NCBI GenBank assembly: GCA_002269645.1 | Contig: NIVC01003855.1 | Coordinates: 1 to 64,000, forward strand | Source of the DNA: Macrostomum lignano | Lineage: Eukaryota | DNA: 64,000 nt | Direction: 5' to 3' | Shown here: one piece after another, positions 48,701-51,700 of the stretch | Layout: the number at the start of each line of letters is the position of its first letter | Numbering within the stretch: position 1 is the first letter of the stretch | The notes under the pieces: model-generated | The model's database searches: none | Seen by the model: the letters and a program-made list of their open reading frames with translations, nothing else | What the model was told of the DNA's origin: nothing | Translations under genes and position numbers: made by a program

Positions 48701-51700
48701 GAGGGGAGGAGAGGAGAGGAGAGGAGAGGGTAGGGGAGGGGAGGAGAGGAGAGGAGAGGAAAAAAGAGAGGAGAGGAGAGGAGAGGAGAGAAGAGGAGAG
48801 AGGAGAGGAGAGGGAGGTGACAGGAGAGAGCTGAGAAGAGACACAAACCCTGAGCTGGCCGCATTGCTATTGTGAAGCTTCAAAAGACCCGAAGGCCGGA
48901 TGAAGAGGCTTCGCGGGCCGCATGTGGTCCACGGGCCGGAGTTTGCCAACCCCTGAAATAGAGTAAAGAGCGATGGTACGACGGTGGAGGTAAGAGCGAG
49001 AGTAAGACAGTGGCTCACTGTCACATACTCGTAGGTTTGATGTTATATATCTATATTTCATATTTCATATAAGACGTAACAATTAATAGCCTTTGCAACT
49101 TCGAAGTCCGAGATGAGCAATGGTTACAGTGAACCCACGCCATCCGCTCAGTTCTTCATCACAGGCCTGTCATTTGCCACATTCGCTGTGGGAGCGGACA
49201 AGCCAGAGAGCCGATTGCAGCTGTCATTCACGCTGTTTCTCACCTCAGTGGCTTTCAAGTTCGTCATTAACCAGTCGCTACCAAAGATTTCCTACTTAAC
49301 TTACATGGTGAGAGTTGTTTACCTGAGCTCGTACTTAGTTCAATCCTGTGCCTCCCTCTCTCGAACTCGTATTACAGTTCATGATATCCGGCCTGTCATT
49401 TGCCACGTTTGCTGTTGAACCAAATAAGTGCGAGTACAGGCTGAGGCTGAGCTTCACCCTGGTATTAACCAGCGTCACGTTCAAGTACGTGGTCGCGCAG
49501 TCGCTACCGAGAATCTCCTACCTGACCTACATGGTAAGGCAGGCGGAACCTTCATATTAGTCCGGGCTTTTGAGGGTGAACGGTGGCTCCAAAACTGATT
49601 CCCGCAATTCGGAATCCAAATTAGTAAGGACGCCATGCACTCACAAAACGAGCAAATTTCGCTGGCAGCGGTAATTTGTTTTTTGAGACGGCATCTATCT
49701 ATCTATCTATCTATCTATCTATCTATCTATCTATCTATCTATCTATCTATCTATCTATCTATCTATCTATCTATCTATCTATCTATATATCTATCTATCT
49801 ATCTATCTATCTATCTATCTATCTATCTATCCATCTATCTATATATCTATCTATATATCTATCTATCTATCTATCTATCCATCTATTTATCTATCTATCT
49901 ATCCATCTATCTATATATCTATCTATCTATCTATCTATCTATCTATCTATCTATCTATCTATCTATCTATATATCTATCTATTTATCTATCTATCTATCT
50001 ATCTGTCTGTCTGTCTGTCTGCTTGTCTGTCTGTCTGTCTGTCTGTCTGTCTGTCTGTCTGTCTGTTTGTGTGTCTGTCTGTCTGTCTGTCTGTCTGTCT
50101 GTCTGTCTGTCTGTCTGTCTGTCTGTCTGTCTGTCTGTCTGTCTGTCTGTCTGTCTGTCTGTCTGTCTGTCTGTCTGTCTGTCTGTCTGTCTGTCTGTCT
50201 GTCTGTCTGTCTGTCTGTCTGTCTGTCTGTCTGTCTGTCTGTCTGTCTGTCTGTCTGTCTGTCTGTCTGTCTGTCTGTCTGTCTGTCTGTCTGTCTGTCT
50301 GTCTGTCTGTCTGTCTGTCTGTCTGTCTGTCTGTCTGTCTGTCTGTCTGTCTGTCTGTCTGTCTGTCTGTCTGTCTGTCTGTCTGTCTGTCTGTCTGTCT
50401 GTCTGTCTGTCTGTCTGTCTGTCTGTCTGTCTGTCTGTCTGTCTGTCTGTCTGTCTGTCTGTCTGTCTGTCTGTCTGTCTGTCTGTCTGTCTGTCTGTCT
50501 GTCTGTCTGTCTGTCTGTCTGTCTGTCTGTCTGTCTGTCTGTCTGTCTGTCTGTCTGTCTGTCTGTCTGTCTGTCTGTCTGTCTGTCTGTCTGTCTGTAT
50601 GTCTGTCTGTCTGTCTACTTAATCTATGTAGTTCCTGTGGATCATAACTGAGAAGCCGGAGAAAACCGTCTCTGAAACCGAAAGCGAGATTTGCACGATT
50701 TACAAGTGTAGTGTCCTTTAACTTTAGCTGTCCAATGTTCTCCCACTGATGGAGACAACATGGGGGATAGCGTGGACACGAGTGAGCTGGCAAAAAAGCG
50801 CTGAGGGGGTCCGGACGCAGGCTTCTGCTCAAATCGATATGGGCGAACTAATTGATGGGTACTCCTCAGTCTCTAGGTCTGATAGATCTGATATCTACAG
50901 AGGTTTAACCTATACACCGATTACGAGTAGAAGGCGCTTTTTTACACTTGAATTAGTATAGACTCGCCGCTTGATTTCGACAAACAATCTGTCTGTCATG
51001 CAATTGCTCAGTCAATATATGATGGAAAAATGCAAAATATGTTAGTCACATCATCAAAACAGATTTAAAAAATCAAATAGCAGTAGCTTGTAGCTCAAAC
51101 ACTGAAGCCAAATCGATTTTAAAAAATTGTTATTCTGGTTTGTCGTAGCTAAGCGAGTTTTACCCGATGGATTTCGTTTGAGCAGAAGCTGATTTGGGCG
51201 CAGCGAGTCCGGGGACCCCCTCGCCGTCACTCAGCAGGGGGTCCCGGCCGCCGAGAGCCCCACAAAAGCCCGGACATCCCGACGCGCATTGCAGAGCGGT
51301 TTTATTGCCTTGGATACTGATTAACGATTGGTAGTCGTTTTTTAAAGCACTTAGAAACTGAATGCGCCAATAAATCAAACGGGATATCAATCAATCAACC
51401 AATCAACCAATCAATCAATCAATCAGTCAATCAATCAACTAATCAATTAATCAATCAATCAACCAACCAATCAATCAATCAACCAACCAACCAATCAATC
51501 AATCAATCAATCAACCAATCAATCAATCAACCAACCAACCAATCAATCAACCAACCAACCAATCATTCAATCAATCAATCAATCAATCAATTAATCAACC
51601 AACCAACCAATCAATCAACCAACCAACCAATCAATCAATCAACCAATTAATTAATCAATCAATCAATCAATCAATCAACAAATCAATCGATTAATAAATC

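What the first reader, a model, noticed from the sequence alone, without database searches (positions are those of the whole stretch)
49191..49512. Exon A/B differences fall on pore-lining residues: Q/R at M2 2', A/T at 13', S/Y at -1'
Seen: aligning R0' to P23' as in GlyR (PARVGLGITTVLTMTTQ..SLP) gives an exact register. Exon A: E-2' S-1' R0' Q2' T6' L9' A13' F16'. Exon B: E-2' Y-1' R0' R2' T6' L9' T13' Y16'. The M1-M2 loop also changes (GADKP vs EPNKC). Known: the -2'/-1', 2' and 13' positions control charge selectivity, conductance and channel-blocker binding in pLGICs (alpha7 V13'T in cation-to-anion conversion; Rdl A2'S dieldrin resistance). Inference: B would place an Arg ring at 2' plus Thr13' (anion-favouring or low conductance) while A is neutral. 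This is a splicing-encoded Q/R switch analogous, not homologous, to the AMPA receptor Q/R site.
Basis: partly seen in the sequence, partly recalled or inferred. Interest (0 to 1): 0.78.

Follow-up and report, generated by a model that had tools for sequence, protein, structure and literature searches.

The report
Alternative pore exons in flatworm channel
A flatworm (Macrostomum lignano) gene for an uncharacterised, bacterial-like 'Cys-less' pentameric ion channel carries two tandem, apparently mutually exclusive copies of the exon that builds the pore helix, one placing glutamine and the other arginine at the spot that is the narrowest point of the open pore in the closest solved relative, so the animal can probably make two channels with different ion flow from one gene.

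Summary
Window 49152-49307 (exon A) and 49378-49533 (exon B) are two 156-nt, phase-0 exons with ag/gt sites, 73% identical in protein. Each encodes the second half of M1, the M1-M2 loop, M2 and the start of the M2-M3 loop. A is E-2' S-1' R0' Q2' T6' L9' A13' F16'. B is E-2' Y-1' R0' R2' T6' L9' T13' Y16'.

The gene (36707-58520, + strand) is a Macrostomum lignano member of the known 'Cys-less' pLGIC clade. Its best solved match by sequence is bacterial ELIC, not GlyR. Pore A equals the ELIC pore, where Q2' is the open-pore constriction.

B is not a dead copy. dN/dS between A and B is 0.14. The B type (R2', T13', Y16') is the only M2 exon of separate genes in flukes and tapeworms.

The nemertean orthologue has the same kind of exon pair, and all 11 RefSeq isoforms use exactly one. 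The annelid Owenia has a pair with R2' versus Q2'.

No transcript evidence for mutual exclusion in M. lignano was available, and the functional effect is untested. The A/B differences are not statistically enriched on lumen-facing positions.

Precedent exists in insect nAChR alpha6 exon 8. Verdict: real, a new variant of a known kind, moderately interesting.

The parts
36707..36772 (+). Exon 1, with the start codon ([22 protein letters not shown]). No signal peptide.
   Evidence: 100% tblastn match to M. lignano UniRef A0A1I8GSY0 (P0001). Splice donor gt.
37051..37554 (+). Exon 2. Hydrophilic N-terminal extension containing the conserved motifs [22 protein letters not shown] and [12 protein letters not shown].
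   Evidence: The motifs are conserved in Lineus, Owenia and Paragonimus.
39909..40037 (+). Exon 3. Start of the ligand-binding domain (beta1-beta2: [17 protein letters not shown]...).
   Evidence: (Pfam Neur_chan_LBD, 31 bits against a 26-bit cutoff).
45685..45885 (+). Exon 4. Covers loop A (YWNP) through the 'Pro-loop' FPLDVQ, with no flanking cysteines.
47156..47413 (+). Exon 5. Rest of the ligand-binding domain, pre-M1 (RCRAARRPG) and the first half of M1 ([10 protein letters not shown]).
49152..49307 (+). Exon 6A. Second half of M1, M1-M2 loop GADKP, M2 with E-2' S-1' R0' Q2' T6' L9' A13' F16', and the start of the M2-M3 loop. This is the ancestral, ELIC-like pore.
   Evidence: Identical lumen residues to ELIC. 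The same type occurs in nearly all spiralian homologues.
49308..49377 (+). 70-nt intron between exons A and B (gtgaga...ttacag). Its polypyrimidine tract fills the 3' half. It is possibly too short for A-to-B splicing.
   Evidence: The equivalent spacer is 39 nt in the M. lignano paralogue (read-through in P0023) and 75 nt in the nemertean contig L003.
49378..49533 (+). Exon 6B. Same segment as 6A, with M1-M2 loop EPNKC and M2 with E-2' Y-1' R0' R2' T6' L9' T13' Y16'.
   Evidence: It is 83-87% identical to the sole M2 exon of the neodermatan 'B genes'.
54319..54636 (+). Exon 7. M3, a short M3-M4 loop containing an NATS sequon, and M4.
   Evidence: and 69 (AF2 helices).
54942..54989 (+). Exon 8. 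Conserved, strongly basic post-M4 motif [16 protein letters not shown].
55913..55978 (+). Probable optional 66-nt cassette exon ([22 protein letters not shown]).
   Evidence: Matches paralogue model P0064 but is absent from model P0150 of this locus. Splice sites read.
58380..58520 (+). Last coding exon and stop codon (NKIQFYQMVETHG...QLTNH*).
   Evidence: (P0150).

Best explanation

An old tandem duplication of the exon encoding half of M1, the M1-M2 loop and M2 has left two intact copies 70 nt apart. The most likely reading is that each mRNA uses one or the other (mutually exclusive splicing). This would give two subunit isoforms with identical ligand-binding domains, M3 and M4 but different pores.

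- Isoform A keeps the ancestral ELIC-type lining (Q2', T6', L9', A13', F16', with E-2') and is predicted to conduct cations like ELIC.
- Isoform B puts Arg at 2', the open-pore constriction one helical turn from the E-2' ring. It also makes the outer hydrophobic half of the pore more polar (T13', Y16').
- B is therefore predicted to neutralise or reverse the local charge, lowering cation (especially divalent) conductance or shifting selectivity, and to alter gating.
- Because the assembly surfaces are shared, A and B could co-assemble. The number of Arg per pentamer could then be graded.

Shown here: the exons, their register, their age and constraint, their homology, and the use of equivalent exon pairs or separate genes in other Spiralia.

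Inferred: exclusive splicing in M. lignano, with steric exclusion by the 39-70-nt spacer as one possible mechanism; that R2' faces the lumen; and every functional consequence.
For: Exon anatomy and register:
- Two 156-nt phase-0 exons with ag/gt sites.
- Both isoforms align without gaps to ELIC from R0' into M3.

Family and fold:
- Pfam Neur_chan_LBD scores above its cutoff.
- The AF2 model has pLDDT 82.8 with a beta-sandwich and four helices. Over 1,100 Foldseek matches have E <= 0.001; all 50 listed are GlyR, GLIC, GABA-A or ELIC.

Position 2' and the pore:
- In open ELIC the narrowest point is Q233 at 2' (PMC9668969).
- The -1' Glu ring is ELIC's selectivity filter (PMC13520879).

Both exons are constrained:
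- A versus B has dN/dS 0.14, with synonymous sites near saturation.
- The M. lignano paralogue keeps both exons; its B differs by 1 aa.

The B type works on its own:
- It is the only M2 exon in separate genes of Schistosoma (3 species), Paragonimus, Hymenolepis and Echinostoma, always with R2' T13' Y16'.
- The A type is the only M2 exon in their paralogues.

Mutual exclusion in orthologues:
- Lineus longissimus RefSeq isoforms X1/X2 and X5/X6 differ only in this exon, and all 11 isoforms carry exactly one copy.
- The tandem arrangement, with a 75-nt spacer, is seen on nemertean-like contig L003.
- Owenia has a tandem pair with R2' versus Q2', both with good splice sites.
Against: - No M. lignano transcript evidence could be retrieved.
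- Two UniProt gene models of this locus (A0A1I8GSY0, A0A1I8GBW9) join A and B in tandem. Both exons are multiples of 3, so double inclusion or double skipping stays in frame and would escape nonsense-mediated decay.
- A 70-nt intron is not generally too short in Spiralia. Capitella splices 56-64-nt introns in the orthologous gene. The Owenia spacer is 206 nt, so steric exclusion is not a general mechanism.
- No competing RNA structure stands out (fold z-score -0.6).
- A/B differences are not enriched on lumen-facing positions (p = 0.3-0.4).
- The nemertean variant exon has V or Q at 2', so Arg is not the universal point of the exon pair.
- The ligand, ion selectivity and even the membrane orientation of this family are unknown.
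Confidence: 0.75

Rival explanations
1. The exon choice mainly tunes gating, packing or assembly rather than ion selectivity. On this reading R2' pairs with E-2' of the same or a neighbouring subunit, T13'/Y16' weaken the hydrophobic gate, and the M1 (F>M, T>S) and 8' (F>V) changes are compensatory packing. The two isoforms would then differ in open probability, desensitisation or partner preference, with similar permeation.
For: - More than half of the fixed A/B differences are off the lumen stripe: -3', 8', 19' and two M1 positions.
- In ELIC, 9' and 16' form the closed-state hydrophobic gate, and 9'/16' mutations are reported not to affect conduction (PMC9668969).
- The nemertean pair differs at 13'/16' but not consistently at 2'.
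Against: - Arg at 2' is fixed in every flatworm B-type sequence seen, and it recurs in the Owenia variant exon.
- Position 2' is the open-pore constriction in ELIC. Five guanidinium groups there are unlikely to leave permeation unchanged.
Confidence: 0.3
2. Both exons are included together in the mature mRNA, as in the UniProt models. The protein would then carry a duplicated M1-half/M2 segment.
For: - Gene models A0A1I8GSY0 and A0A1I8GBW9 join A to B.
- 156 nt keeps the reading frame.
- The 70-nt intron has canonical splice sites.
Against: - It would add about one and a half membrane segments and break the M2-M3 coupling and the topology.
- Both models are truncated inside exon B.
- No homologue in any phylum shows a duplicated M2.
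- All 11 Lineus RefSeq isoforms contain exactly one copy.
- Neodermatan genes have one copy each.
Confidence: 0.05
3. Exon B (or A) is a silent relic of a duplication that is never spliced in.
For: No expression data for either exon were available here.
Against: - Both have an open frame and intact ag/gt sites, and B has the stronger polypyrimidine tract.
- dN/dS is 0.14 despite saturated synonymous change.
- Both exons are retained in the M. lignano paralogue.
- Each type is 83-90% identical to constitutive exons of neodermatan genes that diverged long ago.
Confidence: 0.04

Closest known systems
ELIC (Erwinia/Dickeya ligand-gated ion channel; PDB 2VL0, 8D67, 8TWV)
   Same: - Best solved match by sequence: E = 3e-16 over 255 residues for isoform A and 2e-10 for the B segment.
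- No Cys-loop cysteines.
- Exon A has the same lumen residues: Q2' T6' L9' A13' F16'.
- Conserved R0', the SFTL motif, and LP at 22'-23'.
   Different: - Eukaryotic and intron-containing.
- Glu at -2' rather than -1', and an M1-M2 loop two residues longer.
- No M1 proline.
- A long hydrophilic N-terminal extension without a signal peptide, and a basic post-M4 tail.
- Isoform B has R2'/T13'/Y16', which ELIC lacks.
Eukaryotic 'Cys-less' Pro-loop receptors (Jaiteh et al. 2016, PMC4795631), including the schistosome 'Cys-less' LGICs (Johnson et al. 2023, PMC9874803)
   Same: - Same clade: the best hits are flatworm, annelid, nemertean, mollusc and rotifer proteins of this group.
- FPxD motif without flanking cysteines, and no second Cys-loop.
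- Glu at -2', as reported for all schistosome members.
   Different: - Those papers do not mention alternative M2 exons or the two pore types (a term search in Jaiteh 2016 found no 'splic'; Johnson 2023 was read).
- Here one gene carries both types, whereas the parasites carry them in separate genes.
Insect nAChR alpha6 exons 8a/8b/8c (PMC1919356, PMC6393475)
   Same: - Tandemly duplicated, mutually exclusive exons of a pLGIC gene that include part of the pore-forming TM2.
- Ancient and conserved across orders, with exon loss and paralogue formation in some lineages.
   Different: - A different pLGIC branch (a Cys-loop cationic nAChR).
- No Q/R charge switch at 2' appeared in the passages read.
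- The flatworm case has two, not three, versions.
AMPA receptor GluA2 Q/R site
   Same: Gln versus Arg at the narrow part of a ligand-gated channel pore, selected at the RNA level. In GluA2 this controls Ca2+ permeability and conductance (established knowledge).
   Different: - Unrelated protein fold (tetrameric iGluR re-entrant loop).
- The mechanism there is A-to-I editing of one codon, not exon choice.
- The flatworm exons differ at 13 further residues.
- The functional effect here is untested.

Membership tests
Pentameric ligand-gated ion channel (Pro-loop) superfamily | [quoted passage not shown] | tested here: met
   Pfam Neur_chan_LBD scores 31 bits against a 26-bit cutoff; Neur_chan_memb scores 20-22 bits, below its 28.1-bit cutoff. 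The AF2 model (pLDDT 82.8) has beta strands at 2-183 and helices at 186-208, 214-238, 245-272 and 314-369. Over 1,100 Foldseek PDB matches have E <= 0.001; all 50 listed are pLGIC chains (GlyR, GLIC, GABA-A, ELIC).
Pentameric ligand-gated ion channel (Pro-loop) superfamily | Conserved Pro-loop motif (F/Y-P-x-D) with the invariant proline | tested here: met
   FPLDVQ lies at the end of exon 4. F105, P106 and D108 are invariant in the 42-sequence alignment.
Classical metazoan Cys-loop receptors (nAChR/GABA-A/GlyR type) | Two cysteines 13 residues apart flanking the loop, forming a disulfide | tested here: not met
   The loop reads ...[17 protein letters not shown]... The two Cys positions are occupied by E and L.
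Classical metazoan Cys-loop receptors (nAChR/GABA-A/GlyR type) | Cleavable N-terminal signal peptide placing the ligand-binding domain outside the cell | tested here: not met
   By a crude hydropathy scan only. No hydrophobic segment precedes the ligand-binding domain in this gene. Of 103 family members, 99 also lack one. No dedicated predictor was available.
Eukaryotic Cys-less pLGIC clade (Jaiteh 2016; Johnson 2023) | No Cys-loop cysteines, no second Cys-loop, and grouping with lophotrochozoan/platyhelminth sequences | tested here: met
   [quoted passage not shown] Descriptions match. No formal phylogeny with the published set was made.
Eukaryotic Cys-less pLGIC clade (Jaiteh 2016; Johnson 2023) | Acidic residue at M2 -2'/-1' | tested here: met
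   E-2' is present in both exon A and exon B. This is the feature Johnson et al. report for all schistosome members.
Mutually exclusive tandem exon pair | Adjacent homologous exons of equal length and phase, each with its own splice sites | tested here: met
   156 nt each, phase 0/0, ag/gt sites, 73% protein identity, 70-nt spacer.
Mutually exclusive tandem exon pair | Transcripts contain exactly one of the two exons | not testable with these tools
   No M. lignano transcripts were retrievable. The feature is met in the nemertean orthologue, where all 11 RefSeq isoforms have exactly one copy.
Q/R-type permeation switch (functional analogy to GluA2) | Gln versus Arg at the pore constriction | tested here: met
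   By homology only. Q2' and R2' align to ELIC Q233, which is the narrowest point of the open ELIC5 pore.
Q/R-type permeation switch (functional analogy to GluA2) | The switch changes conductance, divalent permeability or selectivity | not testable with these tools
   Needs electrophysiology. No member of this clade has been functionally expressed according to the papers read.

The most novel reading that the evidence does not exclude
The A/B exon choice is a true permeation switch. A splice-selected ring of up to five arginines at the open-pore constriction would convert an ELIC-like cation channel into a low-conductance, divalent-impermeable or anion-permeable one, graded by the A:B ratio in heteropentamers. 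On this reading the device was invented repeatedly in Spiralia (R2' in the flatworm and Owenia variant exons, T13'/Y16' in the flatworm and nemertean ones) and was resolved into two separate genes in parasitic flatworms.
Probability: 0.35. Interest if true: 0.75.

Novelty: new variant of a known kind. Interest (0 to 1): 0.55.

Why it matters
**An uncharacterised family.** The Cys-less pLGICs of Spiralia are a whole receptor family with no known ligand, selectivity or physiology. They are absent from humans and have been proposed as anthelmintic targets (PMC9874803).

**A ready-made experiment.** The exon pair provides two natural pores on an otherwise identical subunit. One copies ELIC, the best-studied prokaryotic model. 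The other places Arg at the position that limits the open ELIC pore. This makes the role of 2', 13' and 16' in permeation and gating directly testable.

**A link to parasite genes.** The pair explains why flukes and tapeworms have two paralogue types: A genes and B genes.

**A tractable host.** M. lignano is a transgenic model, so isoform-specific expression and knock-outs are feasible.

**An evolutionary example.** Variant M2 exons recur in three phyla, apparently independently. The same variation is carried by alternative exons in some lineages and by duplicate genes in others.

Tried and rejected
- **Transcript evidence for M. lignano.** Two protein searches and a cluster look-up returned only UniProt gene models. 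Some read through introns or join A and B. They are not reliable evidence for either splicing pattern.
- **Competing RNA structures that could enforce mutual exclusion.** Inverted-repeat search and folding of 49100-49600 gave nothing above background (z = -0.6).
- **Enrichment of A/B differences on lumen-facing positions.** Not significant.
- **Phylogeny of the constant parts.** The aim was to decide whether the neodermatan A and B genes descend from one A+B gene. The A clade (94%) and B clade (81%) are each supported. The backbone is unresolved, and M. lignano joins the B genes with only 51% support.
- **Relics of the missing exon type in neodermatan genes.** None found in L001, L002 or L006 at E <= 0.1. 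In L002 only 10 kb downstream of the A exon was available.
- **A third exon copy in the window.** None.
- **Assembly artefact or haplotype duplication.** Rejected because A and B are only 67% identical in DNA.
- **GlyR as the closest relative.** Rejected in favour of ELIC and the Cys-less clade.
- **Lineus genomic locus.** The exact-protein look-up found no record. The nemertean-like metagenome contig L003 was used instead.
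Full report
**1. What is in the sequence**

The window is eukaryotic and rich in microsatellites. At the reported coordinates there are two adjacent homologous exons on the + strand.

| | Exon A | Exon B |
|---|---|---|
| Coordinates | 49152-49307 | 49378-49533 |
| Translation | [52 protein letters not shown] | [52 protein letters not shown] |
| Pore and flanking residues | E-2' S-1' R0' Q2' T6' L9' A13' F16' | E-2' Y-1' R0' R2' T6' L9' T13' Y16' |

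Each exon is 156 nt, starts and ends in phase 0, follows an ag and precedes a gt. The intron between them is 70 nt. The exons are 67% identical in DNA and 73% in protein. A sensitive tblastn search finds no third copy in the window.

The Q2' codon is CAG at 49218-20 and the R2' codon is AGG at 49444-46.

**2. The gene**

Neighbouring stop-free segments carry the rest of a pLGIC subunit. The UniProt models A0A1I8GSY0 and A0A1I8GBW9 of Macrostomum lignano match the window's exons at 100%. The window is therefore M. lignano.

Exon coordinates:

| Exon | Coordinates |
|---|---|
| 1 | 36707-36772 |
| 2 | 37051-37554 |
| 3 | 39909-40037 |
| 4 | 45685-45885 |
| 5 | 47156-47413 |
| 6A | 49152-49307 |
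| 6B | 49378-49533 |
| 7 | 54319-54636 |
| 8 | 54942-54989 |
| Probable cassette | 55913-55978 |
| Last | 58380-58520 |

Exon 5 ends in the first half of M1 ([10 protein letters not shown]). Exon 7 begins at M3 (DKYVLMSL...). A and B therefore each supply the second half of M1, the M1-M2 loop, M2 and the start of the M2-M3 loop.

**3. Family**

- Pfam Neur_chan_LBD is hit above its gathering score.
- By sequence, the best solved match is bacterial ELIC: E = 3e-16 for isoform A and 2e-10 for the B segment. It ranks ahead of GABA-A, GlyR and GLIC.
- The 'Cys-loop' has the FPLDVQ motif but no cysteines.
- An AF2 model of isoform B (pLDDT 82.8) shows the beta-sandwich plus four helices, with M2 spanning -3' to 21'. 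Foldseek returns more than 1,100 PDB matches at E <= 0.001; all 50 listed are pLGIC chains.
- Homologues are confined to flatworms, annelids, nemerteans, molluscs, brachiopods and rotifers in the top 120 hits.
- This is the 'Cys-less' clade described by Jaiteh et al. 2016 (PMC4795631) and, for schistosomes, by Johnson et al. 2023 (PMC9874803). The latter note Glu at -2' in all members, unknown ligand and selectivity, and seizure-like RNAi phenotypes for planarian homologues.
- Neither paper mentions alternative M2 exons (Johnson 2023 was read; a term search of Jaiteh 2016 found no 'splic').

**4. Which pore is which**

Exon A is the common type. Nearly all spiralian homologues read ...[18 protein letters not shown].... 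Its lumen positions (Q2', T6', L9', A13', F16') are identical to those of ELIC.

In ELIC, 9' and 16' form the closed hydrophobic gate. In the open ELIC5 structure the narrowest point is Q233 at 2' (PMC9668969). The neighbouring -1' Glu ring is treated as the selectivity filter (PMC13520879).

Exon B therefore replaces the residue at the open-pore constriction with Arg, one helical turn from the retained E-2'. It also makes 13' and 16' more polar.

**5. Is B functional?**

- Between A and B, synonymous sites are close to saturation (pS 0.68) and dN/dS is 0.14.
- A second M. lignano copy of the gene (P0023, P0064) keeps both exons. Its B differs by one residue, and the spacer there is only 39 nt.
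- The B type is 83-87% identical to the sole M2 exon of separate genes in Schistosoma mattheei, S. margrebowiei, S. japonicum, Paragonimus skrjabini, Hymenolepis weldensis and Echinostoma caproni. All of these have R2', T13', Y16' and a hydrophobic -1'.
- The A type (90% identical) is the sole M2 exon of their paralogues.
- Genomic loci confirm one exon type per gene in Paragonimus (L001, L002) and S. mattheei (L006).
- The A/B split therefore predates the Macrostomum-Neodermata divergence, and each pore type supports a gene of its own.
- A neighbour-joining tree of the constant parts supports the A-gene (94%) and B-gene (81%) clades but not the deeper branching. Descent of both parasite genes from an A+B ancestor with reciprocal exon loss is likely but not proven.

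**6. Mutual exclusion**

No M. lignano transcript was retrievable. The evidence is comparative.

- **Lineus longissimus (nemertean).** The orthologue has 11 RefSeq isoforms. X1/X2 and X5/X6 are identical except for this exon (10 differences, all within it). Every isoform carries exactly one copy.
- **Nemertean-like metagenome contig L003.** It shows the two exons in tandem with a 75-nt spacer and canonical splice sites.
- **Owenia fusiformis (annelid).** It has a tandem pair with a 206-nt spacer. The upstream exon has R2' (with H-1', A4', M16') and the downstream exon has the canonical Q2'.
- **Capitella.** It instead has two tandem genes, A13' versus T13'.
- **Paralvinella and Ridgeia.** Each gene has a single M2 exon.

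In nemertean and Owenia the variant exon lies upstream of the canonical one. In M. lignano it lies downstream. Within a species the two exons are as close to each other as to the same type in other phyla. Independent duplications with convergent changes (R2' twice, T13'/Y16' twice) are therefore plausible, but 52 residues cannot settle this.

The mechanism in M. lignano is open.

- A 39-70-nt spacer, with the polypyrimidine tract occupying its 3' half, could put the branch point too close to the donor of A. This is steric exclusion, an established mechanism in alpha-tropomyosin.
- However, Capitella splices 56-64-nt introns in this gene.
- No RNA structure signal was found.
- Both exons are multiples of three, so nonsense-mediated decay cannot police double inclusion.
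- The UniProt models that join A and B are truncated inside B and would give a topologically broken protein. I treat them as prediction artefacts.

**7.

The core idea, a splice-encoded Q/R difference at a pore-lining position, holds. Four points need adjusting.

- The comparator should be ELIC and the Cys-less clade, not GlyR.
- A is not 'neutral'. It is the ELIC-type pore and keeps E-2', so cation conduction is the default expectation. B also keeps E-2'.
- The differences do not 'fall on' the pore lining in a statistical sense. Three of eight M2 differences hit the seven canonical lumen positions (p = 0.43; p = 0.32 for differences fixed across flatworms). The rest form a second stripe (-3', 8', 19') plus two M1 positions, which looks like helix packing.
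- The direction of the functional effect is conjecture.

A rival reading is that the pair mainly tunes gating or assembly. It remains open at about 0.3.

**8. Novelty**

[quoted passage not shown] The family itself is known.

What appears new, as far as the papers searched show:

- the exon pair in the Cys-less clade;
- its Gln/Arg difference at the ELIC constriction;
- its recurrence in three phyla;
- its correspondence to two paralogue types in parasitic flatworms.

I rate it a new variant of a known kind, with interest 0.55.

**9. Side observation: possible inverted topology**

Across the family there is no signal peptide or hydrophobic segment ahead of the ligand-binding domain. Of 103 members, 99 lack one by a hydropathy scan. 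The N-terminal extension is hydrophilic and carries conserved motifs. A conserved, very basic motif follows M4.

Together with the missing disulfide, this raises the possibility that the ligand-binding domain is cytoplasmic. This was followed only crudely. It should be tested, because it would change how expression experiments must be designed.

Noticed in passing
window 36707-37554 and 54942-54989; family members P0158, P0066, P0102, P0074, P0004 and others: No signal peptide or hydrophobic segment precedes the ligand-binding domain in this gene, or in 99 of 103 family members scanned. The N-terminal extension is hydrophilic and often basic, with conserved motifs (LxPTxRLIxAxExLR..I..NT; KSDERL+IR+EK). 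Directly after M4 comes a conserved, very basic motif (AC+RRRxM..KD+EY). Together with the missing Cys-loop disulfide and the positive-inside rule, this suggests the ligand-binding domain and C-tail may be cytoplasmic, an inverted topology relative to classical pLGICs. No mention was found in the papers searched.
   Followed up: partly
window 47395-47413 / 49152-49170: M1 lacks the proline that is highly conserved in pLGIC M1. The sequence is NVFLIMFFITGL, where ELIC has SFILPLGLIIAA (alignment).
   Followed up: no
window 49690-50620 and 48340-48830: About 930 bp of (TATC)n/(TGTC)n tetranucleotide repeat begins roughly 155 nt downstream of exon B's donor. About 500 bp of purine-rich (GGAGAG)-type repeat lies in the intron upstream of exon A. 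Whether these bind splicing regulators that bias the A/B choice is unknown.
   Followed up: no
window 55913-55978: A probable 66-nt in-frame cassette exon ([22 protein letters not shown]) sits in the C-terminal tail. It is present in the paralogue model P0064 but skipped in model P0150 of this locus.
   Followed up: partly
window 38250-39470: A 36-nt minisatellite in intron 2 gives long stop-free frames (repeating ...[12 protein letters not shown]...). It is probably non-coding repeat rather than a gene.
   Followed up: no
L005 10001-18767 (Capitella teleta KB292506.1): Capitella has two tandem genes of this orthologue about 2 kb apart. Their M2 exons differ only at 12' and 13' (VA versus IT). 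This is gene duplication doing what exon duplication does in Owenia, the nemertean and Macrostomum. The M3-M4 loop there is only about 10 residues, as in prokaryotic pLGICs.
   Followed up: partly
P0022 (Dicrocoelium) and P0024 (Paragonimus heterotremus): These gene models cover the whole protein but lack the M1/M2 exon entirely. This is either a prediction error or an exon-skipped form. Skipping stays in frame because the exon is 156 nt.
   Followed up: no
window 4305-5051 and 9404-15102: Upstream neighbours are unrelated genes. ORF fragments hit Pfam PseudoU_synth_1 and UCH (ubiquitin carboxyl-terminal hydrolase).
   Followed up: partly
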